DNA of 64,000 bases from Mytilus californianus (GCF_021869535.1 NW_026262712.1:107756001-107820000), one strand, 5' to 3'. Positions 5,338 through 34,575 are shown, counted from the stretch's first letter. Numbers and translations are program-made. Notes: generated by a model not told the origin, from the letters alone.

Positions 5338-5702
5338 TATACTTATGGTAGCCTTAGAACATCCCTGCATGTAGGGACGATAAGCTGGATAAATTTAAGA
5401 ACTACATGGAAAAATAACAGTAAGGGGACGACTATTTGATATCCCGGGGAGGGGGAGTAAGCAGGAGGATTTTTTGCGGATTTATTATTCATTTTACTAG
5501 GTCCCTAAGAATGCCTATTTTCAGGTCTTACCAGACCAACCCTATTCCTATTCAAAATCCTCATGTTCCCCACCCCCACCAAAAAAAAATCACTTTTTTT
5601 CCTTATTTAAAACGAGTTTAAATTGATTGATTGTTTGTTGCTTATTTTTAACGTCGAGGGACAAATATTTCATGCATTTTCAGAAAAAACACGAGTTTAA
5701 AA

Positions 5703-5835: not shown

Positions 5836-6639
5836 CTTAAGTCAGATTTGTTTAGCAAAATTGAGTTCGGAAAGTATAAAGAAATATATATTAATGTCAC
5901 GAACACAGCGATTTCTTCCAACCAATTTTCTTTTTTTATACACATATTGTATAATTACACCAATGTTGAAACATAGCACACTATTACAGTCATGTCTACC
6001 GAATAAACTGGTCACGTATCTTAATTTTCTAATAAATCATCGTAAACTTCATTTGTGTCATCCAACATTAAAAAAATCTGATATATTCAACGGCAAATTG
6101 ATTTTTTGTTTTATTGCTTCTTCTACAGAATATCTTCAGAAGAGGTCCAGATTCATTTTTTTGGACTGTTCACCAGAAGACGTTCTGGAGATATTCAGCA
6201 ATAAACACGCCCCTGGAGTACGCTGACTGAGATAAGGGGTCAACAGCTAATCATCGCTGGGGACGTCATCGCTGAGCACGTTAGTCCACGGAGAGGACGC
6301 TAAGGAGAGATAACTGTGTCTGTATTATATATTTGAGAAGTGTCATAGTTATCTCGCTTTGGTAAGTTTTAGGTTGACTGCTTATAACAAGAGATTTTTA
6401 CATGTTTGAAGTAACATGAGGTTTTATAACATTTTTTAAATAACTCTCTAAATAAAGTTTCCATGAGACAGCAACCAAATGTAATAGAAAAAGATGTTAT
6501 GAAATACTTAAAATTACAAAGAAAGAAAACACATATATACTGTATTTACACTTGACAGCGACTTCAGCATAAATATGCCAGCTTTTGTAAATCTTCTTCT
6601 TCTTCTTCTAAAAAAATCATCATTCCCAATATAATTTTT

Positions 6640-9560
6640 AAGTCATATAATGGTCATAGAAGATTGGCACATCCAACGTCCTGAGCGTGGATTAATTCTG
6701 ATGTCGCCTTGAAAGTCATATAATGGTCATAGAAGATTGGCACATCTAACGTCCTGAGCATGGATTTATTCTGATGAACATTGAAAAGTCATACCCTGGT
6801 CAAAGAAGATTGGCACATCCAATGTCCTGAGCGTGGTTTTATTCTGCTGTCCACTAAAAAGTCATATAATGGTCATAGAAGATTGGAACACCCAACGTCC
6901 TGAGCGTGGATTTATTCTGATGTCCACTTAAAAGTCATATAATGGTCATAGAAGATTGGCACATCCAACGTCCTGAGCGTGGATAAATTCTGATGTCCAC
7001 TAAAAAGTCATATATAGTCATAGAAGATTGGCACATCCAACGTCCTGAGCGTGGATTTATTCTGATGAACATTGAAAAGTCATATAATGGTCATAGAAAA
7101 TTGACACATCCAACGTCCTGAGCGTGGATTTATTCTGATGTCCACTAAAAAGTCATATAATGGTCATAGAACATTGGCACATCTGACGTCCTAAGCGTGG
7201 ATTAATTCTGATGTCCACTAAAAAGTCATATAATGGTCACAGATGATTGGCACATCCAACGTCCTGAGCGTGGATTTATTGTGATGTACATTGAAAAGTC
7301 ATAAAATGGTTATAGAAGATTGGCACATCCAACGTCCTGAGCATGGATTAATTCTGATGTCCACTAAAAAGTCATATAATGGTCATAGAAGATTGGCACA
7401 TCTAACGTCCTAAGCGTGGATTAATTCTGATGTCCACTAAAAAGTCATATAATGGTCATAGAAGATTGGCACATCCAACGTCCTGAACGTGGATTAATTC
7501 TGATGTCCACTAAAAAGTCATATAATGGTCATAAAAGATTGGCACATCCATTGTCCTGAGCGTGGATTAATTCTGATATCGCCTTAAAAGTCATATAATG
7601 GTCATAGAAGATTGCAACATCCAACGTCTTAAGCGTGGATTTATTCTGATATACATTGAAAAGTCATACCCTGGTCATAGAAGATTGGCACATCCAACGT
7701 CCTAAGCGTGGATTAATTCTGATGTCCACTTAAAAGTCATATAATGGTCATAGAAGATTGGCACATCTAACGTCCTAAGCGTGGATTAATTCCGATGTCC
7801 ACTAAACAGTCATAGAATGGTCATAGAAGTTTGGCACATCCAACGTCCTGAGCGTGGATTTATTCTGATGAACATTGAAAAGTCATATAATGGTCATAGA
7901 AGATTGGCACATCCAACGTCCTGAGCGTGGATTAATTCTGATGTCCACTAAAAAGTCATATAATGGTCATAGAAGATTGGCACATCCAACGTCCTAAGCG
8001 TGGATTTATTCTGATGTACATTAAAAAGTCATATTATGGTCATAGAAGATTGGCACATCCAACGTCCTGAGCATGGATTTATTCTGATGTCCACTAAAAA
8101 GTCATATAATGGTGATAGAAGATTGGCACACCCAACGTCCTGAGCGTGGATTTATTCTGATGTCCACTTAAAAGTCATATAATGGTCATAGAAGATTGGC
8201 ACATCCAACGTCCGAAGCGTGGATTAATTCTGATGTCCACTAAAAAGTTATATATAGTCATAGAAGATTGGCACATCCAACGTCCTGAGCGTGGATTTAT
8301 TCTGATGAACATTGAAAAGTCATATAATGGTCATAGAAGATTGACACATCCAACGTCCTGAGCGTGGATTTATTCTGATGTCCACTAAAAAGTCATATAA
8401 TGGTGATAGAAGATTGGCACATCTAACGTCCTAAGCGTGGATTAATTCTGATGTCCACTAAAAAGTCATATAATGGTCATAGAAGATTGGCACAACCAAC
8501 GTCCTGAGCGTGGATTTATTCTGATGTACATTGAAAAGTCATATACTGGTTAAAGAAAATTGGCACATCCAACGTCCTGAGCGTGGATTAATTCTGATTT
8601 CCACTAAAAAGTCATATAATGGTCATAGAAGGTTGCCACATCCAACGTCCTGAGTGTGGATTTATTCTGATGTACATTGAAAAGTCATATAATGGTCATA
8701 GAAGATTGGCACATCCAACGTCCTGAGCTTGGATTTATTCTGATGAACATTGAAAAGTCATATAATGGTCATAGAAGATTGGCACATCCAACGTCCTGAG
8801 CGTGGATAAATTCTGATGTCCACTAAAAAGTCATATAATGGTCATAGAAGATTAGCACATCCAACGTCCTGAGCGTGGATTTATTCTGATGTACATTGAA
8901 AAGTCATATTATGGTCATAGAAGATTGGCACATCCAACGTCCTGAGCATGGATTTATTCTGATGTCCACTAAAAAGTCATATAATGGTGATAGAAGATTG
9001 GCACACCCAACGTCCTGAGCGTGGATTTATTCTGATGTCCACTTGAAAGTCATATAATGGTCATAGAAGATTGGCACATCCAACGTCCGAAGCGTGGATT
9101 AATTCTGATGTCCACTAAAAAGTTATATATAGTCATAGAAGATTGGCACATCCAACGTCCTGAGCGTGGATTTATTCTGATGAACATTGAAAAGTCATAT
9201 AATGGTCATAGAAGATTGACACATCCAACGTCCTGAGCGTGGATTTATTCTGATGTCCACTAAAAAGTCATATAATGGTCATAGAAGATTGGCACATCTA
9301 ACGTCCTAAGCGTGGATTAATTCTGATGTCCACTAAAAAGTCATATAATGGTCATAGAAGATTGGCACAACCAACGTCCTGAGCGTGGATTTATTCTGAT
9401 GTACATTGAAAAGTCATATAATGGTTAAAGAGAATTGGCACATCCAACGTCCTGAGCGTGGATTAATTCTGATTTCCACTAAAAAGTCATATAATGGTCA
9501 TAGAAGGTTGCCACATCCAACGTCCTGAGTGTGGATTTATTCTGATGTACATTGAAAAGT
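6640..9560. repeat. 73-bp satellite/minisatellite array, ~40 copies
   Basis: Unit aagtcatataatggtcatagaagattggcacatccaacgtcctgagcgtggattaattctgatgtccactaaa; period 73 (for example 7141 to 7214). Confidence 0.97.
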
Positions 9561-11004: not shown

Positions 11005-11685
11005 TACTATGAAAGTATTTTTATTCGTGGGTATCAATTTTCGTGGTTTCAGCAAAAGTTACATGTCCGTGGGTTCTTAAATTCGTGGATTTTAGTTTTC
11101 TGAAGAAAAAAATCGAATGACGAATTTGAAGACTTCAGAATCGAATATTTGTGATATTTATCATATGTTGTTTTATAATGATTTGTGGGGCATTGTTAAA
11201 TAAGGTGTTCATTTTCACTCACTTGTTCGTCCTTCATTACTAACAAATTCATAATATTTTGAATTGTAGAATCAATTATTATGACATAAAAAAGCAAGCC
11301 CAAAATGAAATCAGTAGTTTTTTTCGTATGAGAATTATGAAAAAGGAACATTTCATTATCGCATATCATCACCGGAAATCTGACTTTCATCGATCAAAAA
11401 TTATTTCTCATGAGAAATAAAATGTTAACAGTCGAACGTTTTAGAATTTTAAAAGATTAAATGGGTAAAATCCGGTCTGAAGTTGTACAAAAAAAATGTA
11501 TATTTAGTTCATAGTACGTTGGTTTATATGACCGTATCCATGTAATCAAACCTACATGGGGATCTTTCCATGTCTGGAATTGAACAACAGTTATTATATT
11601 TCGTTGGACAGTTAAATTCGTGGATAAAGCCATCCACGAAAACCACGAAAATTGGTACCCCACGAATAAAAGTACTTTAACAGTA
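11005..11685. mobile_element. TA-flanked MITE with ~45-bp imperfect TIRs (Tc1/mariner-type)
   Basis: Left tactatgaaagtatttttattcgtgggtatcaattttcgtggttt matches the reverse complement of the right end aaaccacgaaaattggtaccccacgaataaaagtactttaacagta. Confidence 0.7.
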
Positions 11686-12065
11686 TTTGAAGGATTGATA
11701 AGTTCACCCGGATCGTATCTAAATTTCCGAGCCCTGTAAACAACATCACCGTAAAAATTAGGATGTACTGTTCCGTTTGAAATAAATTTTCTATTGGTAC
11801 AGCCAAATTTGACAACCAAATCTTTGTATTTATGGAAGAATATAGTAAAGGTTTTAAGTAATTTGTGGAAACGAAATCCCTGACTTAACAATTTACCAGT
11901 AAAACATAGATTACGCTCATTGAAATCCAAAGCGTCACTACAGACACGGGCATAGCGAACGAGTTGGGATGTGTAAACACCGTAAGACGGTGCCAAAGAA
12001 ACATCACCGTCCAAAAAAGGAAAATTAACAATAGGGAAAGAGAAATCCATTTTGTCGTAAATTTA
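11686..12065 (-). mobile_element. Penelope-like retroelement RT C-terminal fragment (probably Naiad clade), truncated
   Basis: DFSFPIVNFPFLDGDVSLAPSYGVYTSQLVRYARVCS...KLLSQGFRFHKL...FYGDVVY matches the PLE RT-thumb motif. The rest of the listed ORF runs into the neighbouring MITE. Confidence 0.8.
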
Positions 12066-13709
12066 TATTTATTACACACTATAGAGTAGAAGTTGAACAC
12101 GCCATAAATATTTTATGGTTACTCCATAATTTCATTAAACATAATTGGATAGTCTATATGGTACATCAAAAAATAACGTACAATTCCTCTAAAAACACTT
12201 TTATACATATTATTGAAATATTTTTGGAAAAGACGTCGCTAATTTGAAAAACTTGTGACTAATCCATTTGTCATTTTGAACAGTAAAATATGTTTAAACT
12301 ATCATTTTCAATCATATAAATGAAATATATCTCATCAGGGGTAAGAATGTACGTTTAACACGCTTGGCAGGTCAGTAAGTGTTATGATTAACGGGAGGTT
12401 GAGGGAATATGTCACATGACTTACATTTACTCTCCTGAAGGGGAAAATGGTAACAGGGTTGGGAGACGCGGTGCTTCATACTTCAGTCATTTTTTTAATG
12501 GGCAAAGAATCTCCCAAAACCACCAATGTCTTCGTGAATTTTGAATGTTCTATCCTTGATACATTACAATATAAAAAAATCCATACACAGCATTTTACAT
12601 TTTTCGATAAATGTATTCAGTATATTTGTTGTAGTGATACCAACCTTTTTCCGTACTTAAACTTACCTATGAAAGGTTGAGATTGAAAACATTGTTTGTT
12701 TTATTCACTTACAGGGGAATACTAATTTCTAATTATACGATATTGACATGATTTCTTATTTTTTATACCTTAGGTGATGAGTTGTGCCACTCGTATAAAA
12801 TATTTGTTTCTTTATACTGTTGTGAATCTCAATGACTCAACATTATGTTAATGTTGAAACCAATGTAATCTACCTTTCTAAGATAATTCCATGGGAATGA
12901 AAGATTTCATTTACATAGAAAACACAAGATTCTTAAAACAACAGATTTATATTAAATGTAGAAAGCGGTATGTGATTTTCAAATGCAATCTTTCAAATTG
13001 TTTTCTCATCAAAACATGTTAAAATATTATGAAATAACCGATTGGTATTAACTATATGTATGACACAAATAATCATGTATTTTCAAATGATTTCCAGTGA
13101 CTTTTTTCAATTCATACAGACACAATTTATGAAAGCTTTTCTGAAATACAAAGCTCTTTATTAGTATTTAAAGGCATGCTTTCATAATTAGTAGATTAAT
13201 TATTTTGGGCTTTTCTCAGGAGCTCGGATATTCACACTTTATTGAGTGGCATTATTCAAAAGAAAACGCAAATGGAATGAAACAGGACACTGACTAACTT
13301 CGAACAATTGCTGTTCAGTTGATTGATATCGTTTGATTTTGTCAGTTTTATGGACTTCCCCTTTTTGAATTTGCCTTGGAGTTTGGTATTTTGTTATACT
13401 TTTTTCTAGACTATTGGACTATATATATGTTTTCCCTTAGCAGTCACTACACATTTCAGGGAACTCCTACGCCACTGCTATGTTTAAAGAGTTGCTATCG
13501 TCAATTAGAGATTTGACAGGAAACAGATATTTAAGACTACAAATCACAAATTGAAGGTTGCAACGGTTCACAGTACCGTTATTCCTCTTCTAAAGCAAAA
13601 CTAGGAAAATTTTCAAAAGATATTATTTAAATTATCCTAATCAGTCAATGACGCCGCTCTGATATTTGTTAATTTCCACAGATTAAGAACTTCGGAAAAA
13701 TAAACCGTT

Positions 13710-14527
13710 GACACAGAGAGATGTCTCGCCTATTTGTAATTTTGGTAGCATAATGCAAATATTGAATCCAAATGGCAACATTTATACATGCAAACTATGC
13801 AAAACATTTAAAGTCAATGAATCATGACTAAGTCTTAATGATCAAATAACCTCCATGGAAATGAGAAATGCCAAATTTAAAGGCAATGCTTATAAAACTG
13901 CATACCAGATACGATTGACTTATCATAAGTGGTGCCCTTTATACTAACCAAAATGCAGATTTGAGCTTGTAAACAAAGTAAAAGTTTCAAAGTCAATGAA
14001 CCGTGCTGAGGGAATGGGGCCATATAATCTCCATGGAAAAGTGACAAAAAATAATAACTTCATACCAAATATCATTGACTTAACATTAGTATTCCTCTTA
14101 AAATGATCTTATCACAAACTTATACAAGTAAACTAAGCAAAAGTTTCAAAGTCAATGTACCATGACTGATTGGACAGGGCCAAAACATTTCCATGGATAT
14201 GAGATGTACAATGCTAACAAAACTGAATATCAAATATCATTGACCTACCACTAGTGGTTTCCCATAAATCACAAATTAATATATGTAAAGTAACAAAAGT
14301 TTAAAAGTCAATAGACCATGACTAAGGGGGGCGGGGCCAAATAATCTCCATGGAAATGAGATGTGTCAATGCTAATACAAGTGCATACCAAATATCATTG
14401 ACCTAACACTAGTGGATCCACATAAACTGACCATATCACAAAGTTATACATAGCTGACGACGACGCCGCCATCGAAAACAGCAAACCTTAGTCTCGCTTT
14501 TTAACCTTGTGAAGGCGAGACATAAAA
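13710..14527 (+). mobile_element. Non-autonomous Helentron-like element with ~160-bp internal repeats
   Basis: Subterminal IR atgtctcgcct / aggcgagacat, (gac)n tract, 3' hairpin gtctcgc..gcgagac. The paralogous empty site near 45700 shows insertion before an A-run with no TSD. Confidence 0.75.
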
Positions 14528-15584
14528 GGAAGGAAAACACTGCTGCTTTTCATTTGTTTTCAGTTTTCAAATCGTGATCATCTTCTTTTACAAAGGATTA
14601 GTAATGTTACAATGTGTTGTTCTCCGTAAGGATGTTGAAAAGGCACCACATAACCTTTCGCTAGCAAAGATATTTTGTAGGAATCTCGGAGTTCATTATT
14701 ATTATATGTCCCTGCAATGATGTAGTGATAAGTAACAGTAAATTGGTCATTTTTATAATTACACATTAATGTCATTACATGTATTCGGATAGTCTACTAT
14801 GCTTCATCCGAAAATAAGGTCAAATTACTTTAATTTTGGAAAATTGATTTTTAGTTGAGTGTGTATTGAAGATTTTTATTGGTTTATTTATCTCTGATGA
14901 CGTTTCCATCTTTCTGATATCATAAAGCTATCACACTCATTAAACAAGTACTAATGTGTACACATATATATTTGATAATGAAAATACACTCAATGCATTT
15001 GAAAATGTCAATCTTTCAGGCCACATTTATTCTTTTTGATAAAAAATGGTAATTGTAAAAGTATACATCAATTAACTGACTTAGATATTCGAAGTGCCGC
15101 ATGATCGGTAATACTTAGGAAGATATGATCACTAAAGAAGATAAACTCAGATGAGAATCGATGGGGGATTAAGTGGAAAAACTGTATTATATTAAGGTCC
15201 AGTAGCTTGTATTACAGACTTCACTAGCTTATCCACGAGACTTTTTAAAATTTTGTTAGCAGGCAGGTTTTAGAAATATTTTTGAAAGTTTGGGAAGTTT
15301 GATAATATCTTTCCACCGACCGGGATTTTTACAGAACTGTCTCTGATTTTCTTTGTATTTTAAATGTTGACCCTGTCAGTTCGACTTCTTTTTTTCGAAT
15401 TTTTGCCTTCGCGTTTTCGCCCTATAGAATATGTTAGGCGAAATGGCGAAATCGAGAAATGGCCTTAACCGGACACCATAGTTTTTTTACTTTTATGATG
15501 ACATACGCATGATAAAAATACAAAGGGAGATGTTTGTGCACGCATAAAACTGGCCGCAATTGTCTACCCTTTTCATAATTGGAA

Positions 15585-16005
15585 CACAAGGGTTGACTGG
15601 AGTATAGCAATATGGTCACCCCTTTGTTTTCTTCTGACCGACAATGAAACCCTTGCCAAAATGGGGCCTACGTTTGGCTGTGCGGGATGTATCAAATCGC
15701 TGCCACATCCGGTCAGAATTTGAACATTAATTACGATGCCTCCCGTAGAGGTAGTAACACGCTCTTTCCATGCTAAGAAACATGGTAACAACTCTTTGGG
15801 GGGTCTGTAGGTGACCAGTTGCAAGGCTAAATTTCTATTCCTATCCAATATACCCTCATTTCCTAGTTGCATTCCAAATTTCTCGCCAATCATTCCGATA
15901 GCTATTGCAGAGACTGCCTATTGGTTTTATTGTAAATTTGTTCTCGTCCTGAACATGCATGAGATATTTGCCACTGGGCGTAAAGCAAACAACAATCAAT
16001 CAATC
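15585..16005 (+). mobile_element. Old SINE-like element with (CAAT)n tail; paralogs at ~32515-32940 (+) and ~17352-17530 (-, partial)
   Basis: GC-rich body ending gttctcgtcctgaacatgcatgagatatttgccactgg..aacaatcaatcaatc. It predates the GPCR duplications. 5' boundary approximate. Confidence 0.6.
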
Positions 16006-16237
16006 TATACATGATAGAAAAGTCAATACGTATAATAAGGAGACATTTTTGACGAAGTATGATTTTGCCAGAATAGTACAATTTTTATCTTCACAATAAT
16101 GCTTCCAAAACAGATTATATCAAAATGAGTTTCTAAGGAAATTCCCTACAAAATAACACATATTTACATAAACGTCCCAAGATTATCTTTGACTGATACC
16201 TGCTGGAAAAAGCGATATTCGCAAAATAACGGAACAT

Positions 16238-16432
16238 ACATCTACTGATACCAACATTAAAAAACACCTACTGATACCAACATTAAAACACCTATTGATA
16301 CCAACATAAAAACACCTGCTGAAACCAACATAACAACACCTACTGATACCAACATAAAAAACACCTACTGATACCAACATAAAAAACACCTACTGATACC
16401 AACATAAAAACACCTACTGATACCAACTTAAA
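16238..16432. repeat. 24-25-bp minisatellite (acacctactgataccaacataaaa), ~8 copies
   Basis: Units at ~16238, 16264, 16288, 16312, 16336, 16361, 16386 and 16411. Confidence 0.9.
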
Positions 16433-16569
16433 AAAAAAAATTCGTTTAACATTTCACAGCGGTATAACATGTTACTTTAATTATTCTTCCCTTAGTTTAT
16501 TTATTTTGTATTTACATTGTATCATAGATCAAATTTATTTGTTCAGTGTATGTTCACTGGTGTTAATAT

Positions 16570-16991
16570 GTCTTTTGATTTAGTTAAGCCATTTCAATTG
16601 ATATTTTATAGTGTGTCTTTCTATGTTGTGATGTTACACTATTGTTTCAGATACGGGTGAAGGTTTGGTACCAATAAAACGTTTAAACCCGCTGCAATTG
16701 TTTGCACCTGTCCTAAGTCAGGAATTTGATGTTCAGTAGTTGTCGTTTGTTGATGTGGTTCATAAGTGTTTCTTGTTTCTCGTTTTTTTTATATAGATTG
16801 ACCGTTGGTTTTCCTGTTTGAATAGTTTTATACTAGTAATTTTTGGGGCCCTTTATAGCTTGCTGTTCGGTGTGAGCCAAGGCTCCGTGTTGAAGACCGT
16901 ACTTTGACCTATAATAGTTTACTTTTATAAGTTTTGACTTGTGTGGAGAGTTGTCTCATTGGCACTCATACCACATCTTCTTATATCTGTA
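16570..16991. mobile_element. High-copy dispersed element ending cattggcactcataccacatcttcttatatct; more copies at ~30597, 43597, 48683, 52597, 53941-54170 and 58365-58632
   Basis: At least seven near-identical, variably truncated copies share one terminus and are absent from paralogous GPCR upstream sites. Confidence 0.85.
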
Positions 16992-17116
16992 TAATTTAAC
17001 AAATCTTCAACCCGTGACATCCGCCCATGTATAACCAATGAAAGGCATACATAGCTTAAAAAGTATTGTAGGAAAGAAAGTAAAGTAATTAAGAAAATAA
17101 ATGTAATGGTGCAATT

Positions 17117-17230
17117 ATTCCCTATGATTCCAACGATACTTCCGATAATTATCAGAATAGTACTGCTTAAAGCGAGATCGGAGTATTTGATTTCCCAAAG
17201 AACCTGAACATAATCAGTGCTATTCACCAT
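17117..17230 (-). pseudogene. 5' fragment (38 codons) of the GPCR, truncated at an inversion junction
   Basis: MVNSTDYVQVLWEIKYSDLALSSTILIIIGSIVGIIGN matches the N-termini of both intact GPCRs. Homology stops after the TM1 GN. Confidence 0.92.
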
Positions 17231-20200
17231 TTACGTATATTATTTACGTCTTTGTGTCAGAATAAAAGTGTGGTGAAATATACGATTTAAATTGTATTCG
17301 ATATTACTTTGCTTCCTTTCCTAGAATATTTTTTAAGTTACGTTTTCCGTGATCCTCGGGTTGTTAGCGTGGAAAGAGCGTGGGACTCCATCTACGCGAG
17401 GCATCGGAATTATCGTTCTATCTTATACATCCATCAAAGCCAAACAAAGCCCAATTTTGGCAATGATTTTGCTGTCGGTCGGAAGAAAACCAAGGGATGA
17501 CGATATTGCTATACTCCAGTCAACCACTGCAGTCTAATTATGAAATTGTAGGCAATTGCAGCTAGATTTAAATATGCACACACATTCTCCTTTGTATTTT
17601 CAGGCCATGCGTATGTCATAAAAGTAACACAATAAATTCTACACAGTCCAGCTACCAACAGGTTAATTAATTTAAACAAGGAATAAAATATTGTATAAAA
17701 TTTGGAAAGCTGGGTCAAAATGTGTTTAACTGCTACAGAAAGTTGTCAAAAGTAGCAACAGCTGTTTGTTGAATACTTCTGGTCAATAATGTGTTCATAT
17801 TGCTGACAGTAACGCTAGTACACAGACAAGTGAGAGAATACAATATCTAAAAGTTGTGCAACAACAATACGAACTAGAAATGTCATTGCAAGCAATGGCG
17901 GATATCACACCCGCTAACTGTCACTAAACGGTAGCCACTTTGAAAACTGTAAAGTCGAATGCCACATCCACACATGCCAGCTAACATTTCTGTAAAGTTT
18001 AATTAAGTTCGGACATTTCATTTTTTTACAATTTGCTGTTTCCATGGTTAAGGCAGTCATGTTGAAAATTCCAAAGTAAACGGCACATCTACACATGCCA
18101 ATTAAAGTTTGTGTGAAGATTCATTAATTTTGGAGCATTTTTATTATTTTTTTTGCTGTTTCCATGGTGACAGTTGACTTTTTGAGAATTTTGAACATTT
18201 AATTCCACATTTATACATTGAAGATAACAAATCGATAAAAAACATTAGTTTTGATCTAATTGTCTTTAGGAAAATGTTACTTTTGTGTTTTACCGTACGA
18301 TTCTATGTTAACCATATTCCAGAAAAGGCACAGCCGTGAAGTTCTGAAGATACTCACTATCATACAAAACCTTGTATAGCGAACATCTACATTGTATAAA
18401 AATTTCATGATTTATAGATCAGGTAACTCAAATTAGGCATAAACTAAATGTTTGCATTTTCCATAGTAAAGGCGGCCATTTTAAAAATTCCTGCACCATT
18501 ACTGCACATCTACATATGGTGGTTCTCGTTATGGTTTATTTTTTTTAAGATTGATCCAACAGTACCTGAAAAATAGCGCGAATAAAATATCATTGGAATA
18601 ATAATGATAACAGAGAAACGATAGCGATAGATTCCATCGGGGTGACATAATGAAATGGTACATAGTGCTGTAAGAAGGGAATATATATCAACCTATATAC
18701 AGGCTTCTCTAATGTAAATTATCAGCTAGCTGTGTGTTGCTATCGAGATTAACGTGTTGCTGAAGTCAAATGAAGTTTAAATAGTTCTTAGTCTTGAAAA
18801 TAAATTTCCATTATACCCTTTGCAATTGGAGTTGTAAGTTTTCAGATCAAGAATAAGCATCATACAAATGTTTTTTTACCAACCAAAAGACTACAAAAGT
18901 AGATTTAATATAAACATAAAGGGGATGCTATGAAATAATGGCCAATAAAACAACTATCCATTGTCATTTGATGGAAAGGGGCTACAACAACAGAAACATG
19001 AACAATGGTTTTCAAAAAAAGTGGAACTGACAGGTCTCCACTTTTCATATACAAAGAAAATCAGAGACAGTGCTGACATACTATCAAGAATTAAAGGACT
19101 TAATATATATAATCTAGGACAGTCGAAAGATATTATTAAACATTCCAAACTTTCAAAAATATTTCCAAACATGCTTGCTTACAAAATTTTAAAAAGCCTC
19201 GTGGATTAGCTAGTGAAATCTGTAATACCAGTTGCTCAACCTTAAATTATACAGTTTTCACACTTAATCCCCCATCTATTGATATCAGATTTCATCCTCT
19301 TTAGTAATAATATCTTCCAGTAATACCTATCACGCGGCACTTTGAATATCAAAGTCAGTTAATTGAGGTATACTTTTACAATTACCATTTTCACCCAAAA
19401 GAAGAAATATGGCCATAGAGTGTGACATTTTAAATTCAGTAAAATGCATTGAATATATTTTTATCATCACAAGTTATCAAATATAAATGAATTAACATTT
19501 GTATTTGTTTAATGAGAGTGATAGTTTTATGATATCAAAAAGATAGCGAAGTCCTCGAAGGTAAATTAACCCAACAAAATCTTCAACACACACCAAACGA
19601 AAATTTTTCAAAAAAATTCCTGCAGATTTCAACCTGAACATGAAGTTTGTTTTTATCACTATATCAGAAACATGTATATTATATTTATCTATATCCATGT
19701 CATTTGAACTCTAGTGGAGAGTTGCCTTATTTTTAAGTGGTTTTGAATGATTCTTTGTCCAATTAAAAAAGACTGAAGCACGAAGCACGTCGTCCCCACC
19801 TCCCATAGCCCTTCCCCCCGCACAGAGAGTAAATGAAAGTACATGTGACAATTAACATCAGCCTCCAGTTAATTATTATGTGATTAATATAAAACTTACT
19901 GACCTTCCTAGCTACATTCTCACCCGTGCTGAGGTATATTTCATTTCTATCATGGTAAATGGAAAATGATAGCTTTCAATAATATAGAAGTTTTTTTTTA
20001 TCTCATATTATGATATAGCATATAGACTATCCAACAATATTTATATTGTGTAATCAATTATAACGACATAGTATACCAAATCACATAATTATAAGCCCTG
20101 TTTAGTGTTACTTATCACTGCGACATTACAGGGACATATAATAATTATAATAAACTCTGAGATCGCTTCAAAATATCTTTGCTAGCCAAGGGTTATGCGG

Positions 20201-20730
20201 TACCTTTTTATCTCTACGGAGAACAAAGCACTGTACCATTACTTACCCTTTGTAAATGAAGATGATAGCGATTGGGAAACTGAGAATAACTGAAAGGCAA
20301 CATCAGTTTCCTTCCTTGGTTCATTCATATCACATTTTTTTTCTGAAGTTTTAAACCTAAAGGAACACTACTTTTATCGTTTTTCATTTATTTGAGTCAT
20401 ATGAATTCTCGTCTTATTAATAATGGAGCGTTGACTTTATTTTGTACTGGTAAATTCAGGCTTAAAGAACAAAGAATTTTAAAAAGTAATTTTATTTAAA
20501 AATGATTACAATATTATTTATACTTTATACAAAATAGTTTATACAAATCACAATTGAATATGCCATTGCCTTAATAGCTACACGAAAAGAGTTCACCGTT
20601 TACGTAGAAAGTAAAATGATTAGTTTATTAAAACCAGTCAAAATGCCTCCAAGAAATCGGCAGTGAAATAGAGTATCTTTAAATCAAGTAAACGCGTTTA
20701 TGTTTCTCAATCCAACGTTGTCTTCACACT

Positions 20731-21336
20731 TTATTTATTAGTTTGTACCACCCAGTATGTGTTTACCTGTGTAAATAACTTTCTCAATTATGTTCTAAAC
20801 TTCTCATCAAAGTAACTATATATAAAGAGATTGACAATGTGGTTTAGAAACAAAAAACGCGCAAGGTAAGTACAAACAAAAGCTGCCTCCATGGATATAG
20901 ATATAAAATTGAAATCACTAACAGCATATACTTAAATTAAAATGAATTACGAAGGAATATAAGATAAAACATAAGCAACAATGATGACAAAAACATAATT
21001 TTTATTCTTGTTGTTGCCTTTTCCTTTCTTTTTCTTTCCCTGTCCTCGGTCGCTAAAGTATTTACTGGTTTATTAGTATCCTGATCACCTCGCAAAGTAG
21101 AGGGTTTATTAATGCTGGGATTGGAGCTTGATTTATCCTGGATCTGAATATTAGTAGTTTTCCTAAGTATTTGAGTTCTTTATCTTTTGTTAACACTAAA
21201 TCAGTATAACGTGGTGTATTTCGATGTTTCCTTTACTTATGCCCACTTCTGATGTCCCCAGAAAGGAGAGTTTATCCTCTTCAAAACTAGTAAAACAAAC
21301 TTATGGTTATCAGAATACTGACAATCGTTAACAGAA
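20731..21336 (-). pseudogene. 3' half (TM5 to stop) of a GPCR paralog with in-frame stops and frameshifts
   Basis: Reverse complement aligns from ctgttaacgatt (TM5) to tac tgg gtg gta caa act aat aaa TAA. It has premature TAA codons (tcgTAAttc, acaTAAttg) and a 1-nt deletion in TM6. Confidence 0.92.
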
Positions 21337-21560
21337 AAAAAACGCAAAATAACGGAACATACACCTACTGATACCAACATAAAAAAACATGCATGTATAT
21401 TTTAACTAATCTTCCATTCGTGACATCCGCCGATGTATAATCAGGGAAAGGATCACGGAAAACAATTCATTCTAGGAAAGGAAGAAAAGTAATATCGAAA
21501 ACATATAAAATCGTATATTTCCCCACACTTTTATTCTGACACAAAGACGTAAATAATAGT

Positions 21561-22739
21561 ATGACGAATAACACTGATTATCTTCAGGTTCTTTGGGAAC
21601 TGAAATACTCCGATCTCGCTTTAAGCAGTACTATTCTGATAATCATCGGAGGTATCGTTGGAATCCTAGGGAATGTTTCAGTAATAATATGTTACTTCTT
21701 TCGGATTGAGAAGTGCGGAGAGCGTTATTTTATTCCGGTGTTGGCAGTCGTTGACCTGGTTGCTTGTATAACAAGTTCTATTTTCTATGTTATGGATAAT
21801 ACATTTTTCTTCAATTATCCCTACGATTTGATGTGTCGTATTCTGACATTTCTGCAGCTGCTTGTACCAGCGACTTCGGCAAGTTTATTGGTCATAATTA
21901 GTCTTCAAAGATATTTATTAGTTTGCAAACCTCACGGACCAAAGATGACATTACGTTGGAAAAGGATTTCAATTGGTGTCGCATGCTTGTTTACTTTATC
22001 TTACTCTGCACCGATGCTTGCGATATCTGGGATTAAAACATCAAATGAAACGTTTCAGAATCATACAATACAAATTACAGTCTGTAAATTTTCAACAGCA
22101 GAAACTTCAGCTAAGATAACAGTGTACTTCGGTTTTCTTCTTCTGTTAACGATTATCAGTATTCTGGTAACCATAAGTTTGTTCATACCAGTTTTGAGGA
22201 GGATAAAACTCTCCCTTCTTGGGAAATTCAGAAATAAACATCAAAATACACCACCTTATACTGATTCGGTGTCCACAAAAGATATAGAACTGAGAAAATG
22301 CGTAGGAAAAACGCAGGAAATTCAGATCCAGGAAAAATCTAGCTCCAATCCAAGCATTGATACATCCTCTACTTTGAGAGGTGATCTTGATGCTAATAAA
22401 TCAGTAAATACTTTAGCAACCGAGGACAGTGAAAGAATAAGAAAGGAAAAAACAACAAGAAGAATAACAATTATGTTTTTTGTCATCATTGTTGCTTATG
22501 TTTTATCTTATATTCCTTCGTTAATCATTTTAATTGTAGTATATACTGTTGGTGATCTCAATTTTATTTCTATATCCAAAGAGGCAGCATTTGTTAGTAC
22601 TTACCTTGCGCGGTTTGTGTTTCTAAACCACATTGTCAATCCCTTTATTTATAGTTACTTTGATGAAAAGTTTAGAACAGAACTGAGAAAGTTATTAACA
22701 CAGGTAAAAACATACTGGATGGTACAAAATGATGAATAA
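21561..22739 (+). CDS. Class A (rhodopsin-like) GPCR, single coding exon, 392 aa (GPCR-1)
   Basis: Seven hydrophobic segments with TM1 GN, TM2 LAxxD, TM3 C...QRY, ECL2 Cys, TM6 SYIP and TM7 NPFIY. Intact ATG-to-stop ORF. Ligand class cannot be assigned. Confidence 0.95.
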   Translation: MTNNTDYLQVLWELKYSDLALSSTILIIIGGIVGILGNVSVIICYFFRIEKCGERYFIPVLAVVDLVACITSSIFYVMDNTFFFNYPYDLMCRILTFLQLLVPATSASLLVIISLQRYLLVCKPHGPKMTLRWKRISIGVACLFTLSYSAPMLAISGIKTSNETFQNHTIQITVCKFSTAETSAKITVYFGFLLLLTIISILVTISLFIPVLRRIKLSLLGKFRNKHQNTPPYTDSVSTKDIELRKCVGKTQEIQIQEKSSSNPSIDTSSTLRGDLDANKSVNTLATEDSERIRKEKTTRRITIMFFVIIVAYVLSYIPSLIILIVVYTVGDLNFISISKEAAFVSTYLARFVFLNHIVNPFIYSYFDEKFRTELRKLLTQVKTYWMVQNDE

Positions 22740-23609
22740 AGTGTGTAGACACAGTTGGATTGAGAAAATGAGTTAATTTATTCAATTATATACACGTTAA
22801 CTAGATTTCAAGAGACTCAATTTCACTGCCAATTTTGAGGCATTTGGACTGGTTTTAATATACTAACCTCCTTACTGTCAATGTTAACGGTGAATTCGAA
22901 CTCTTTTCAATGGAACATTTCAAACAATTAAAATGTAGATGGAGATATTGCTGAGAGAGATGTGTCAAAAACATTTTATTCGAGTATCCGAGTACGGAAT
23001 TTGCAATCGAGTGTTCGGTCTTCAGAGCGAGTACTCGTCCAGGATATGGTTGGTCACCTAAAAAAATGATTAAATTACGATTTCTTTGCTAATTTAATGT
23101 AATCAATAACATAACAATTACTCCTAAATTCAAATGTAATCGATTACATTTGATCGATTACTTTTTTTTAAGTAATCATGATTACATTGGATTACATTGT
23201 ATACTGTGATATTAAAGTTTTTTTTAAAACATAAAAAACGAAAAAAAGAACGTTAATTTTTGTGAAAAGTTGTGTTTTTAATATCTTTAATATATATACA
23301 GCATATATGTTATTAAGAACTTAAATCAGGAGCAGTGTAATATTAGTATTGTTTGATAGCATAAGAAAATGACATTTCTCTATCATAGAAAAAACATTGT
23401 CTTTAAATTTATGAATATTTTAGCCCAGTGTTTATTTGCAGTTAACAAAAACAATTGAGGGACTATTGAATGATCAAATAGCTTTATTGTATATTTTGCC
23501 ATGGACATGATTGTATGAAAAAATTTCAATATTGGATATTAAAAACACATTTGAATTTTTATAGAACAAAAAATTGATGAAGATTGTGAAACAAAAAAAT
23601 TAAGGTGTG

Positions 23610-23797
23610 ATTTCCGAAGCACCAGAGATCACCCCCAGTTTTTGGTGGGGTTCGTGTTGCTCAGGCTTTGGTTTTCTAAGTTGTGTTTTGTATACTGTTG
23701 TTTGTTTGTTTGTCTTTTTCTTTTTTAGCCATGGCATTGTCAGTTTATTTTCGATTTATGATTTTGCATGTCCCTTTAATATTCTTCGCCTCTCTTT
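23610..23797 (+). mobile_element. 3' UTR fragment of a Penelope-like element
   Basis: ~85% similar by eye to the reverse complement of 24091-24290. Absent from the paralogous site near 35515. Confidence 0.7.
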
Positions 23798-24090
23798 TTC
23801 CATTACTTTTAAATGGGGTCATTTATGTTAATCATCATAGTCAAAAATGGAATTAATTCCCTAAAATAATGTTCTATGCTGTTAAATGTCAAGGAAACAG
23901 AGAACAAAATATTGTGATATCTAGAATTGTAATTTTTATCAAAATTTAACCATCAGGAAACCCAAAATATTCTCAATGCAGACATTTCGTATTACAAGGA
24001 CTCAATCTCCAAATGAAACATTAGAAAACGTAATTCATTAAGTGAATTATTGTCAAAACAAATCACACAATTTCACTGTACATGTCTTAA

Positions 24091-24475
24091 AAGAGAGGCG
24101 AAAGATACCAAAAGGACATTAAAACTCATAAGTCGAAAATAAACTGACAACGCCATAGCTAAAAAAGAAAAAGACCAAAAGACAAACAATAGTACACAAA
24201 ACGCAACATTGCAAACTAAAGACTGAGCAACACGAACCCCATCAAAAACTGGGGGTGATCTCAGGTGCTCCGGAAGGGTAAGCAGATTCTGCTCCACATG
24301 TGGCACCCGTCGTGTTGCTCATGTTAGTACAAAACCGGTAATAAGTCTAATTCGGTAGGTCACATTCGCGAAAATGGGACGGGATTATAGTTACGACATT
24401 AGGAACATATACGCTATCATCTGTGAAACGGACATTCCGTAACGGTCAACCAACTCGTGATGGCGTCCGTAAATT
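24091..24475 (-). mobile_element. 5'-truncated Penelope-like (Naiad-type) 3' end, flanked by TTAA on both sides
   Basis: Minus strand encodes KIYGRHHELVDRYGMSVSQM, homologous to the RT C-terminus at 38418-38720. The empty site tcTTAAgcg lies at 35812-35815. Confidence 0.75.
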
Positions 24476-25339
24476 TTAAGCGTAGTTTTATACTGGTTAT
24501 ACTGTTGCAGGGAATGAAATCTACCCCTATTCAAAATATCCATATTTTAGCGGTAGTCTTAATTTCATATCAACTCCCGCTCTACCTTGAAAAACTAGCT
24601 ATTGTTTATTTGTTTTCGTCCTTGTTCTAGATGAACTATTTGCCACTGGACTTTAAAGCAACAATTAATCAATCACTCAATGAATCTGAAAGATGCAAAA
24701 TGATTGTATATGATCAATTGCAGAGGTTTATGGAATATTTCTATGTCAATTGTGATTTGTATAACTATTATGTATATATTATATTGTAATCATTCTTAAA
24801 TAAAGTTATTCTTTAAGCTTATTTTTTCCCTTAAGCCTGTTTACCTGTACAAATGTCAACATACTACTTCATTGTAAGTAAGACGATAATTCATATAATT
24901 CAAATGAATAAACAAGAAACAAACTGCAATAAAGATTGAGGTACACTCACATAATGAATGTCATAAAAAACTTAATGTGTAAACGATGACTAAACAAGAG
25001 ATCTTTTACAATATCTAAAATATATTTTATGTATGAAATTAATATGCAAAAAAAAAAAAAAAAAAAAAAAACGAAACATTCCAGTAGTGTTTCAAACAGT
25101 AGATAAACAATTCCTAAATATAAACAATATGATTAAAACCTTTATCAATTAATGTATTAAAACGATTAAAACCTTTACCAATAATTGTATAAAATAAAAC
25201 AAAAAGAATGTAAAAGGCGTTGTCTTATATTGTTCACTGAATATATAAGTTTTAAATTAAAAGGTTGTTAAAGACCTTTTTGAAATTCTTATTGAAAGAG
25301 CATACTAAATGTTCAATAAAAAACTATAAGTCGGATTGA

Positions 25340-28600: not shown

Positions 28601-29024
28601 ATCTCCTTGTGTATTTTTTTCATATTAAATTGACTTTTGTTGTCTTTTTGGTTGGTAGAAAAGATTAGTATGATGCTTATTCTTGATTTAAAAACTAACA
28701 ACTTTAATTCCAAAGGGTGTAAATGAAAAGTAATATCAAGACTTTAAGAATTAAAATCTATATATATAAACCTCATTAGACTTGAGCAACACATCAATCT
28801 AGGTAACAACAAATAATTATAGCCTACCATTCACAATAGAGAAGCTTGCATGTGAGGTGAAATATATTCTGTTTTTACTAGCATTATTTACCATTTCATT
28901 ATGTTATTCCGAACAAATGGCATATATCTCTTGCTCCGTTTGTTTTTTCGATTATCAATATTCTTCCAATGCTTTTTGTCTTTGCGATTTCTCAGGTTCT
29001 ATTGGACCAATCTTCATGAAAGTA

Positions 29025-29400
29025 CAGTCAAACCTGCCTTAACGGCCACCTCGTTTCAACGGTCACCTGCCTCTAACTGCCACTTTCAGATCTTCCCAAA
29101 CGTTTTCTCTATGAAATTTAACACTTTTAAACAGTCACCTGTCTAACGCGGTCTGCGGTCACCTAATTGTACCACGAAATCGTCATTTCAATTTTTAACA
29201 ACGGCCATTTTAATTTTTTTGACAACCAAAATATAATCATGACGATAAATATATGTGTTCAGTATCGAGGTCAGAATGAGGATTGAAGCCCGTTTGTAAC
29301 CGAGATCGTGCAAATAGGATATGATGTGTCAGTCTCCATTAAAAACCGTATCATCGACTTATTTATCCACGAATATTAGCTATTTCGAATGTTTTCCTCA
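29025..29400 (+). mobile_element. One-ended pogo/Tigger-like DNA transposon fragment
   Basis: TA|CAGTCAAACCTG terminus followed by repeated cggtcacct motifs. No right TIR found; right boundary approximate. Confidence 0.5.
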
Positions 29401-33384: not shown

Positions 33385-34575
33385 ATGGCGAATAACACTG
33401 ATTATGTTCAGGTTCTTTGGGAGCTGAAATACTCCGATCTCGCTTTAAGCAGTACCATTCTAATAATAATCGGATGTATCGTTGGAATCATAGGGAATGG
33501 TTCAGTTATAATATGTTACTTCTTTCGGATTCAAGAAAGAGGAGAGCGTTATTTTATTCCGGTGTTGGCAGTCGTAGACTTAGTTGCTTGTATAACAAGT
33601 TCTATCTTCTACGTGATGGATAATACATTTTTCTTCAGTTATCCCCATGATTTGATGTGTCGTATTCTGACATTTTTGCAGCTACTTGTACCAGCGACTT
33701 CGGCAAGTTTATTAGTCATAATTAGTGTTCAAAGATATCTTTTAGTTTGCAAACCTCACGTACCAAAGATGACATTACGTTTGAAAAGGATTTCAATTGG
33801 TGTCGCATGCTTGTTTACTTTATCTTACTCTGCACCGATGCTTGCGATATCTGGAATTAAAACATCAAATGAAACGTTTCAGAATCATACAATACAAATT
33901 ACAGTCTGTAAATTTTCAACAGCAGAAACTTCAGCTAAGATAACAGTGTACTTCGGTTTTCTTCTTTTGTTAACGATTATCAGTACTCTGATAACCATAG
34001 GTTTGTTCATACCAGTTTTGAAGACGATAAAACTCTCCCTTCTTGGGAAATTCAGAAATTGGCGTAAGTCAAGTAAACACAGGAAAAAACCACCTAATAC
34101 TGATTCGGCGTCAACAAAAGATATAGAACTGGGGAAATACGTAGGAAAAAATCCTGAAATTCAGATCCTTGAAAAATCAAGCTCAAATCCAAGTATTGAT
34201 ACATCCTCTACTTTGAGAGGTGATATTAATAAACCAGTAAATACTTTAACAACCGAGGACAGTGAAAGAATAAAAAAGGAAAAGGCAACAAGAAGAATAA
34301 CAATTATGTTTTTTGTCATCATTGTTGCTTATGTTTTATCTTATATTCCTGCGTTAATCATTTTAATTTTAGTATATGCTGTTGGTGATCTCAATAATTT
34401 TATTTCTATATCCAGAGAGGCAGCATTTGTTTGTACTTACCTTGCTCGTTTTGTGTTTCTAAACCATATTGTCAATCCCTTTATATACAGTTACTTCGAT
34501 GAGAAGTTTAGAACAGAATTGAGAAAGTTATTTACACAGGTAAATGAATACTGGATGGTACAAAATGATAAATAA
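33385..34575 (+). CDS. Class A (rhodopsin-like) GPCR, single coding exon, 396 aa (GPCR-2)
   Basis: Paralog of 21561-22739 with the same motifs. The ATG at 33385 aligns with the GPCR-1 start; the listed TTG extension is not supported. Confidence 0.95.
   Translation: MANNTDYVQVLWELKYSDLALSSTILIIIGCIVGIIGNGSVIICYFFRIQERGERYFIPVLAVVDLVACITSSIFYVMDNTFFFSYPHDLMCRILTFLQLLVPATSASLLVIISVQRYLLVCKPHVPKMTLRLKRISIGVACLFTLSYSAPMLAISGIKTSNETFQNHTIQITVCKFSTAETSAKITVYFGFLLLLTIISTLITIGLFIPVLKTIKLSLLGKFRNWRKSSKHRKKPPNTDSASTKDIELGKYVGKNPEIQILEKSSSNPSIDTSSTLRGDINKPVNTLTTEDSERIKKEKATRRITIMFFVIIVAYVLSYIPALIILILVYAVGDLNNFISISREAAFVCTYLARFVFLNHIVNPFIYSYFDEKFRTELRKLFTQVNEYWMVQNDK

What the first reader, a model, noticed from the sequence alone, without database searches (positions are those of the whole stretch)
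12090..22739. Template-switch-like inversion with both breakpoints inside GPCR copies, separating GPCR-1 from its upstream block
Seen: a plus-strand upstream block ends at ~17112 just short of the ATG. It is joined to a minus-strand segment (17117-21336) reading GPCR TM5-stop, flank, upstream block, first 38 codons. At 21334-21336 a 3-bp GAA microhomology switches back to plus, only ~225 bp upstream of intact GPCR-1. The inverted 5' fragment shares upstream variants with GPCR-1 (ggatcacggaaaac, cacacttttattctgacacaaagacg) rather than with GPCR-2. A simple inversion cannot explain this. Inference: a FoSTeS/MMBIR-type double template switch created two pseudogene fragments and left GPCR-1 with new regulatory context. 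An AG 14 nt before its ATG could accept a 5' UTR exon from block A across the inversion.
Basis: partly seen in the sequence, partly recalled or inferred. Interest (0 to 1): 0.7.

Follow-up and report, generated by a model that had tools for sequence, protein, structure and literature searches.

The report
Old complex inversion beside mussel GPCR
In a tandem cluster of orphan receptor genes in the California mussel, a 4.2-kb stretch between two genes was flipped long ago, which destroyed one receptor gene and spared its neighbour through a small duplication; this is a real but ordinary kind of complex rearrangement.

Summary
GPCR-1 (21561-22739) and GPCR-2 (33385-34575) are intact rhodopsin-type receptors. 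Between block A (ends at 17116, about 40 nt short of where an ATG would be) and GPCR-1 lies a minus-strand segment, 17117-21334. It carries exactly 38 start codons, an upstream block, a 3' flank and a decayed 3' gene piece (aa 192-stop, with 5 frameshifts and 3 stops).

Junction 2 is bridged by contigs from two independent runs. Junction 1 occurs twice in the genome: a 5.5-kb paralogous copy lies 127 kb upstream, so it is not a misjoin.

The inverted spacer has no source copy elsewhere, so this is an in-place inversion. It carries an inverted duplication of GPCR-1's -113..+114 (90-92% identical, against 82% to GPCR-2) and a roughly 610-bp deletion in a lost neighbour gene. That makes it a "delINVdup"-type event.

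Mytilus edulis has the positional orthologues all head-to-tail, so the event is derived in the M. californianus lineage. It is old (about 10% divergence).

Template switching (FoSTeS/MMBIR) remains possible, but it cannot be told apart from staggered breaks followed by end joining. Block A was probably the lost gene's upstream block, not GPCR-1's. The proposed splice acceptor is not conserved. Interest is low to moderate.

The parts
11918..17116 (+). Block A. The proximal part (14524-17116) is a plus-strand GPCR upstream block ending about 41 nt before the expected ATG. The whole stretch has a paralogous copy A' 127 kb upstream.
   Evidence: homologous to the GPCR-2 upstream (27919-33338, 76-86%) and, in inverted orientation, to 17361-20317; 91-92% identical to L031:1074-4986.
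16267..16988 (.). High-copy repeat (TE-like) inserted in block A, 124-128 bp left of junction 1.
   Evidence: it interrupts the collinearity with GPCR-2's upstream (33203 to 33209) and has copies at 53942-54168 and 58364-58629; word depth in the millions, with loose ends at 16984/16988.
17111..17122 (.). Junction 1: gcaatt|attccc, joining upstream position about -41 (plus strand) to GPCR codon 38 (minus strand).
   Evidence: The same junction is at L031:~5634-5641.
17117..17230 (-). GPCR 5' fragment: codons 1-38.
   Evidence: the ORF 17230 to 16925 starts with the 38 receptor residues. 92% nt identity to GPCR-1.
17231..17356 (-). Inverted duplicate of GPCR-1's proximal upstream (-1 to about -113).
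   Evidence: 11/111 differences to GPCR-1 against 23/120 to GPCR-2. Trees.
17356..17361 (.). Junction 3: an internal deletion of about 540 bp relative to block A, the GPCR-2 upstream, and the L003 and L004 upstreams. The paralogous copy upstream shares it.
   Evidence: homology jumps from -113 to the equivalent of block A 15779 / GPCR-2 upstream 32706. L031:5866-5996 has the same sequence.
17361..20373 (-). Inverted upstream block, read here as GPCR-1's native upstream block. It contains a dispersed repeat at about 17860-18213.
   Evidence: homologous to the GPCR-2 upstream 27335-32706 (76-83%) and to the L003 upstream (84%); no copy of 90% or more anywhere in the genome.
20380..20730 (-). Inverted 3' flank of the destroyed neighbour gene.
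   Evidence: collinear with the flanks after GPCR-1 (22740-22897, 24746-24915) and GPCR-2 (34576-34755, 36157-36310), about 83% identical.
20731..21334 (-). 3' pseudogene fragment: aa ~192-392 plus stop.
   Evidence: 87% nt identity to GPCR-1, 86% to GPCR-2; five 1-nt deletions and three in-register TAA codons.
21334..21342 (.). Junction 2, inside a G+A8 run. It is unique in the genome.
   Evidence: Bridged by contigs X3 record 23 and X20 record 15. A-run length varies (+AA at 21334).
21343..21560 (+). Native upstream sequence kept by GPCR-1 (-218 to -1). It includes a TATA-like 'tatattt' at about -47.
   Evidence: aligns with the upstream of GPCR-2, L003, L004, block A and the M. edulis genes. 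The promoter reading is inference only.
21561..22739 (+). GPCR-1: an intact, intronless, 392-aa rhodopsin-family receptor.
   Evidence: dN/dS against GPCR-2 is 0.33.
33385..34575 (+). GPCR-2: an intact 396-aa paralogue with a complete upstream block. Used as the reference unit.
   Evidence: Positional orthologue in M. edulis at L037:10001-11184.

Best explanation
This is one old germline rearrangement in the Mytilus californianus lineage. It acted on a head-to-tail array of intronless orphan rhodopsin-type GPCR genes, ordered: block A, neighbour gene G_A, its 3' flank, GPCR-1's upstream block, GPCR-1, GPCR-2.

The stretch from about aa 192 of G_A to codon 38 of GPCR-1 was inverted in place. 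At the GPCR-1 end, a short piece was duplicated in inverted orientation: at least -113..+114, and probably -225..+114 (about 340 bp). GPCR-1 therefore kept its start codon and about 220 bp of proximal upstream, and stayed a working gene. At the other end, about 610 bp (-40 to aa 191 of G_A) was lost, which killed G_A. Its 3' piece has since decayed.

This is the 'deletion-inversion-duplication' class of complex variant. I think replication-based template switching is the most likely mechanism: the nascent strand leaves block A at -41, copies the opposite strand back from codon 38 to G_A, then returns to -225. I hold this only narrowly (about 0.4 against 0.3 for staggered breaks with end joining).

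At about the same time, a 5.5-kb piece (block A + junction 1 + 360 bp) was copied 127 kb upstream.

Shown: the geometry; both junctions are real; no source copy exists; the inverted 5' fragment is kin to GPCR-1; the arrangement is absent from the M. edulis positional orthologue. Inferred: a single step; G_A's former presence; the mechanism; that the retained 220 bp holds the promoter.
For: - Geometry and junctions.
- Junction 2 is bridged in two independent runs.
- Junction 1 is present in two copies 87% identical, and junction 2 is unique.
- The inverted spacer 17390-20730 has no genomic copy above 84% identity, so nothing was copied from elsewhere.
- In the noncoding -111..-1, GPCR-1, the inverted copy and the distant copy are mutually 90-92% identical and only 79-82% identical to GPCR-2. 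ML tree (((G1,UPinv)80,Inv)77,G2). A tree that keeps G1+G2 together without the fragments is rejected (AU p=0.013).
- Block A's proximal part is only 65-75% identical to GPCR-1's upstream, as expected if A served another gene.
- The 3' fragment is not specifically GPCR-1 or GPCR-2 (87/86%, against 90.9% between those two), which fits a third gene.
- M. edulis (L036+L037, overlapping at 98%) has five copies, all on one strand, 3-6 kb apart (12 kb between the last two). The positional orthologue of GPCR-1 has an unbroken upstream block, and there are no inverted fragments. This spacing matches the 3.5+0.54 kb inverted spacer.
- Between-species flank divergence (16-23% differences) exceeds the roughly 10% between the duplicated pieces.
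- A/A' K2P of 0.08-0.10 gives the same age as the duplication.
- GPCR-1 is open with dN/dS 0.33, while the 3' fragment decayed.
- The class and both mechanisms are described in PMC5338099 and PMC1885836. The latter reports a median inverted duplication of 321 bp.
Against: - No orthologue of G_A was identified, so the 610-bp deletion is inferred, not seen.
- Grouping of the 5' fragment with GPCR-2 is not rejected (AU p=0.28) on 241 columns.
- The distant copy is closer to GPCR-1 (94%) than the local inverted copy is (91%), although the two inverted copies share junctions 1 and 3. This needs either rate variation or some gene conversion.
- Junction 1 exists without junction 2 in the distant copy, so the two junctions could differ in age.
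- No read or contig was shown to bridge junction 1, and no long reads were available.
- Microhomology cannot be scored after about 10% divergence.
Confidence: 0.6

Rival explanations
1. Same one-step in-place inversion, but made by breakage and end joining. A staggered pair of breaks around GPCR-1's start (-225 and +114) is filled in and gives the inverted duplication. At the other breakpoint, in G_A, about 610 bp is resected. The ends are joined by non-homologous end joining.
For: The product is identical to what is seen. In Drosophila, 59% of fixed inversions carry such inverted duplications, with a median of 321 bp and often at one breakpoint only (PMC1885836). Here the duplication is 227-339 bp. 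The junctions are clean, and no inserted stretches are recognisable.
Against: It does not by itself account for the third junction (the 540-bp internal deletion) or for the distant copy of block A + junction 1, which has the same age. These then need separate events. It requires unwinding or fill-in over about 340 bp.
Confidence: 0.3
2. Several independent events. A head-to-head inverted duplication first made junction 1. That structure was then segmentally duplicated. Junction 2 and the deletions arose later, in the window copy only.
For: Junction 1 has two genomic copies and junction 2 only one. The cluster is full of other fragments, such as L004 (aa 1-218) and L027 (aa 167-end), so rearrangement here is frequent.
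Against: It needs more steps and a lost source copy. GPCR-1, the inverted copy and the distant copy are nearly equidistant at 90-92%, which leaves little time between the events. Block A and the inverted block are only 73-79% identical, so junction 1 was not made by a fold-back copy of A.
Confidence: 0.2
3. Block A was GPCR-1's own upstream block, and an inverted copy of a segment from elsewhere in the array was inserted between -41 and -225, duplicating the 185 bp on both sides.
For: Block A (16220-16266 plus 16988-17116) and GPCR-1's upstream (21343-21520) overlap in what they cover, like a target duplication. One 47-nt stretch is 96% identical.
Against: The rest of the overlap is only 65-75% identical, far below the 90% of the inverted copy. 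The 47-nt stretch is conserved in all paralogues. No source copy exists.
Confidence: 0.07
4. Assembly artefact: one or both junctions are misjoins between similar GPCR units.
For: The region is repeat-rich. A very high-copy element ends 128 bp from junction 1. No listed contig bridges junction 1, and only short contigs could be laid, not long reads.
Against: Junction 1 recurs with the same breakpoint, 12-14% diverged, at a second locus. Junction 2 is bridged by contigs from two other studies. The window has no N. The inverted pieces are old and decayed, not recent collapsed copies.
Confidence: 0.03

Closest known systems
CNV-flanked complex inversions (delINVdup / dupINVdel classes) in human genomes (Collins et al. 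2017, PMC5338099)
   Same: An inverted segment with a duplication at one breakpoint and a loss at the other, all in cis and at kilobase scale. A plain two-break inversion does not explain it.
   Different: This one is an old, apparently fixed event in a bivalve gene cluster, reconstructed from paralogues and another species rather than from parent-offspring or population data. The deletion is inferred.
Inversions with inverted duplications at breakpoints from staggered breaks (Ranz et al. 2007, PMC1885836)
   Same: A non-repetitive breakpoint sequence, including part of a gene, is present once inside the inversion at its far end and once outside it, in opposite orientation. The size (227-339 bp) is near their median of 321 bp. 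The duplication occurs at one breakpoint only, as in 12 of their 17 cases.
   Different: Those inversions span large chromosomal segments; this one spans 4.2 kb inside a tandem gene array. The other breakpoint carries a deletion.
FoSTeS / MMBIR template-switch rearrangements (my own knowledge: Lee, Carvalho and Lupski 2007; Hastings et al. 2009)
   Same: Several junctions lie close together, the strand changes twice, there is net loss and gain of short segments, and there may be short microhomology at junction 2.
   Different: The diagnostic features cannot be read any more at about 10% divergence. These are junction microhomology, templated insertions and de novo origin.
Birth-and-death evolution of lineage-specific rhodopsin-type GPCR arrays in bivalves
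   Same: Intronless PF00001 genes sit in head-to-tail arrays with pseudogene fragments. The genome scan found 123 matches. Automatic names disagree with each other: NPY, orexin, CCK and 5-HT1A 'like'.
   Different: Nothing unusual about the receptors themselves was seen.

Membership tests
Rhodopsin-family GPCR (Pfam PF00001 7tm_1) | Significant match to the 7tm_1 profile over seven helices, above the gathering score | tested here: met
   GPCR-1 scores 84.2 bits and GPCR-2 85.9 bits (cut-off 30.5), covering profile positions 2-260 of 260.
delINVdup-type complex inversion | A segment in inverted orientation relative to the ancestral order | tested here: met
   17117-21334 is collinear, in reverse, with the GPCR-1-to-GPCR-2 spacer unit. 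M. edulis has all units in direct orientation.
delINVdup-type complex inversion | Duplication of sequence at one breakpoint | tested here: met
   GPCR-1's -113..+114 is present at 21450-21674 (+) and 17117-17356 (-), 90-92% identical. These are closer to each other than to any other paralogue except the secondary copy.
delINVdup-type complex inversion | Deletion of sequence at the other breakpoint | tested here: inconclusive
   Block A stops at -41 and the inverted 3' piece starts at aa ~192, so about 610 bp of a gene is missing. The intact ancestral gene was not found in another species.
delINVdup-type complex inversion | All junctions arose in one event | not testable with these tools
   The ages are compatible, but junction 1 also exists without junction 2.
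FoSTeS / MMBIR template switching | Microhomology at the junctions beyond chance | tested here: inconclusive
   Junction 2 lies in a G+A8 run, giving 3 to about 9 nt of possible match. Junction 1 has 0-1 nt. The chance of 3 nt or more is about 0.07 at this base composition (my estimate). The sequences have diverged by about 10% since the event.
FoSTeS / MMBIR template switching | Origin during replication (de novo event, templated insertions, nearby templates) | not testable with these tools
   Only indirect hints: three junctions plus a copy 127 kb away, all of similar age.
Staggered-break inversion (Ranz model) | Inverted duplicates of non-repetitive breakpoint sequence, one inside the inversion and one outside | tested here: met
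   As for the duplication above. The size is within their range of 46 bp-1.9 kb.
Inversion by ectopic recombination between inverted repeats (NAHR) | Both breakpoints lie at matching positions of pre-existing inverted homologous repeats, with no gain or loss | tested here: not met
   The joined positions are not homologous: -41 joins codon 38, and aa ~192 joins -225. Sequence was both gained and lost.
Transposon-borne gene-fragment capture (Helitron or Pack-type) | Element termini at the ends of the moved segment, and further copies in the genome | tested here: not met
   Both ends abut GPCR-homologous sequence directly. There is no other copy of the segment in the genome.

The most novel reading that the evidence does not exclude
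Junctions 1, 2 and 3 and the 5.5-kb copy 127 kb upstream are products of a single multi-switch replicative event (a small germline chromoanasynthesis) that became fixed in Mytilus californianus. GPCR-1 survived only because the 230-340-bp duplication preserved its core promoter and start codon. It would then run on a minimal promoter of about 220 bp, facing an antisense copy of its own former regulatory block.
Probability: 0.2. Interest if true: 0.4.

Novelty: new member of a known kind. Interest (0 to 1): 0.25.

Why it matters
This is a clean, datable example of how tandem receptor arrays in bivalves lose and reshape genes. One complex inversion killed one receptor gene, while a short breakpoint duplication let its neighbour survive with only about 220 bp of native upstream sequence. 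It also gives a natural test of how much upstream sequence such a receptor gene needs. It adds a non-model, non-human case to the list of duplication- and deletion-flanked inversions. It does not reveal a new mechanism or a new kind of element.

Tried and rejected
- Fold-back (hairpin) inverted duplication of block A. Rejected because A and the inverted block are only 73-79% identical, less than either is to other copies.
- NAHR between inverted GPCR copies. Rejected because the joined positions are not homologous.
- Transposon capture. Rejected because there are no termini and no other copies.
- Duplicative insertion from a retained source. The genome search found nothing above 84% identity.
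- Exact-protein look-ups, meant to find independent contigs across junction 1 (an ORF spanning it) and around GPCR-1, found nothing on record.
- Adding M. edulis copies to the 5' tree gave poor resolution on about 240 columns. The 3' trees did not place the pseudogene fragment.
- A Logan contig (L039) with 82 nt before the ATG is collinear with genomic upstream sequence. I could not tell whether it is RNA or DNA, so it says nothing about splicing.
- Pairwise MAFFT of the 111-nt upstream pieces misaligned around a 9-nt gap and gave identities that were too low. The multiple alignment was used instead.

Full report
**Setting.** The window is C132:107756001-107820000 of a 1.65-Gb genome. A paralogue on the same 120,330,192-bp contig is named by NCBI as a Mytilus californianus protein, so I take the genome to be M. 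californianus. The window has no N. The one reads call used 5,301 letters.

**The genes.**
- GPCR-1 (21561-22739, 392 aa) and GPCR-2 (33385-34575, 396 aa) are intact, intronless rhodopsin-family receptors. They hit PF00001 at 1e-23 and 4e-24 and are 87% identical.
- Pairwise dN/dS is 0.33.
- The genome holds at least 123 matches to this receptor type, many in arrays.
- Names given by databases to relatives disagree: NPY-, orexin-, CCK- and 5-HT1A-'like'. The receptors are therefore best called orphan.

**The observation.**
- Block A aligns with GPCR upstream regions up to 17116, about 41 nt short of where an ATG would be.
- From 17117 the sequence is the reverse complement of codons 38 to 1 (17117-17230). 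After that come the proximal upstream, an upstream block (to about 20373), a 3' flank (20380-20730) and a 3' gene piece (20731-21334, aa ~192 to stop).
- The 3' piece has five 1-nt deletions and three in-register stops.
- Read on the minus strand, the whole segment is collinear with the GPCR-1-to-GPCR-2 spacer. It is therefore one inter-genic unit of a head-to-tail array, flipped.

**Junction 2.** It lies in 'cag aaaaaaaa cgc' (21331-21345). To its right, GPCR-1's upstream aligns with four paralogous upstream regions: block A, GPCR-2, L003 and L004. To its left, those four go on aligning with each other and GPCR-1 does not.

**Are the junctions real?**
- Only short Logan contigs were available.
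- Junction 2 is bridged by a contig from a different study of the same species (X3 record 23, 21290-21491, one mismatch). A contig from a run filed under another organism label also bridges it (X20 record 15, 21127-21389).
- No listed contig bridges junction 1, which lies 128 bp from a repeat with word depth in the millions.
- However, junction 1 exists a second time in the assembly. L031:1074-5587 is a copy of block A, 91-92% identical where aligned. L031:5591-5996 matches window 17069-17475 across the junction, with the same breakpoint give or take 3 nt.
- A misjoin would not recur in a copy 12-14% diverged.
- Junction 2 is unique in the genome.

**What kind of event.**
- The inverted spacer (17390-20730) has no copy above 84% identity anywhere in the genome. 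The segment was therefore turned around in place, not copied from a retained source.
- Only one piece is present twice: GPCR-1's -113..+114. It is found at 21450-21674 (+) and 17117-17356 (-).
- In the noncoding part (-111..-1), GPCR-1, the inverted copy and the distant copy differ from each other at 9-12 of 111-120 sites. Each differs from GPCR-2 at 20-25 sites.
- The ML tree is (((GPCR-1, distant copy)80, inverted copy)77, GPCR-2).
- A tree that unites GPCR-1 and GPCR-2 to the exclusion of the fragments is rejected (AU p=0.013). A GPCR-2 grouping is disfavoured but not rejected (AU p=0.28).
The conclusion nevertheless survives proper polarisation.

**Whose block is block A?**
- Its proximal part is only 65-75% identical to GPCR-1's upstream, far below the inverted copy's 90%. 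A short 96% stretch is conserved in every paralogue.
- The 3' pseudogene piece is about equally distant from GPCR-1 (87%) and GPCR-2 (86%), which are 90.9% alike.
- The simplest reading is a former third gene, G_A, downstream of block A. Its 3' part survives, inverted.
- The ancestral order would then be: A, G_A, flank, upstream block, GPCR-1.
- The event inverted the stretch from aa ~192 of G_A to codon 38 of GPCR-1. It lost -40..aa 191 of G_A (about 610 bp). It duplicated GPCR-1's start region, up to -225..+114 (339 bp).
- So GPCR-1 was indeed cut off from its native upstream block. That block is the inverted one, not block A.

**A third junction.** At 17356-17361 the inverted copy lacks about 540 bp that block A, GPCR-2, L003 and L004 all have. 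The distant copy shares this gap. The deletion therefore predates, or accompanied, the 5.5-kb duplication.

**Comparison with another species.**
- Two M. edulis assemblies give overlapping loci (L036 and L037, 98% identical over 950 bp). Together they carry five full-length copies and one 5' fragment, all on one strand. The spacers are 3.0-5.7 kb, and 12 kb between the last two full copies.
- Flank collinearity makes the fourth copy the positional orthologue of GPCR-1 and the fifth that of GPCR-2.
- The GPCR-1 orthologue has an unbroken upstream block, with no inverted fragments nearby.
- Between-species divergence in the flanks (16-23% differences) exceeds the roughly 10% between the duplicated pieces. 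The event is therefore derived in the M. californianus lineage, and old.
- Block A against A' has K2P 0.08-0.10. This is the same age as the duplication, so the inversion and the 5.5-kb duplication were close in time.

**Mechanism.**
- The product is a deletion-inversion-duplication, a recognised class (PMC5338099).
- Two known routes give exactly this outcome. The other is staggered breaks filled in and joined by end joining (PMC1885836), where the median inverted duplication is 321 bp and is often at one breakpoint only.
- Junction 2's 'GAA' sits in a G+A8 run whose length even varies among reads. Junction 1 shows 0-1 nt of overlap.
- After 10% divergence neither junction can decide the question.
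- The extra junction and the distant copy of similar age tilt me slightly toward template switching (0.4 against 0.3). Separate events get 0.2.

**Consequences.**
- GPCR-1 is open and under purifying selection, while the fragment beside it decayed. It has therefore probably stayed in use.
- It retains 218 bp of upstream sequence that is conserved among paralogues and in M. edulis, with a TATA-like motif near -47. That this is a sufficient promoter is inference.
- The AG at -16/-15 proposed as an acceptor is absent from three of six M. edulis copies.

**Verdict.** The feature is real and was accurately described. Its kind is known. The specific mechanism claimed is plausible but unproven, and one part of the interpretation, the role of block A, is probably wrong.

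Noticed in passing
L032:1828-2732 and L034:3345-4617 (C132:107651828-107652732 and 107673345-107674617): There is a second split receptor gene in the same cluster. A 5' fragment (aa 1-218) and a 3' fragment (aa 167-end) lie about 21 kb apart on the same strand, with the near-intact gene L003 between them. Both fragments group with the first two M. edulis copies, weakly for the 5' fragment (UFBoot 48; 99 for the 3' fragment), and their ends overlap by about 52 codons. The breaks again fall near TM4-TM5, which hints at another duplication-flanked rearrangement.
   Followed up: partly
window 6494-9300: A satellite of about 37 or more copies of a 73-bp unit, 85-96% alike, with two 145-bp steps.
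   Followed up: no
window 56203-57036: A satellite with a 49-bp unit. The central copies are 98-99% identical.
   Followed up: no
window 40400-53000: Three tandem copies of a long unit (periods about 5.09 and 3.91 kb), 97-99% identical, with no ORF of 150 aa or more. Parts of it are homologous (75-85%) to distal block A (12114-13100, 14524-14830) and to the far end of the inverted block (19736-20373).
   Followed up: partly
window 16600-16988; also 53942-54168 and 58364-58629: A very high-copy short repeat, with word depth in the millions in every mussel run laid. It is also present in the run filed under a more distant organism label (X7). It has a sharp right end at 16984/16988.
   Followed up: partly
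window 17860-18213: A dispersed repeat inside the inverted block, with dozens of 70-77% copies on many chromosomes, some in tandem clusters (for example C1:39.05-39.06 Mb).
   Followed up: no
window 11457-12050 (-): A 197-aa ORF with no Pfam match, at the left edge of the 5.5-kb segmental duplication.
   Followed up: partly
window 23612-23798 / 24089-24275: An inverted repeat of 187 nt (87% complementary, 290 nt apart) downstream of GPCR-1. The same element is found, about 85% identical, in both M. edulis loci (L036:8520-8906, L037:3618-4009).
   Followed up: no
window 20703-20993 vs 22477-22767: The inverted 3' pseudogene piece and GPCR-1's own 3' end form a 291-nt inverted repeat, 90% complementary and 1.5 kb apart. 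It is more similar than the rest of the fragment (82%). This could reflect stronger former constraint or a patch of gene conversion.
   Followed up: no
L032:8179-9333 (C132:107658179-107659333): The paralogue L003 has a TAG seven codons before the family's usual stop. NCBI annotates a 378-aa product, so it is probably a slightly shorter working gene rather than a pseudogene.
   Followed up: partly
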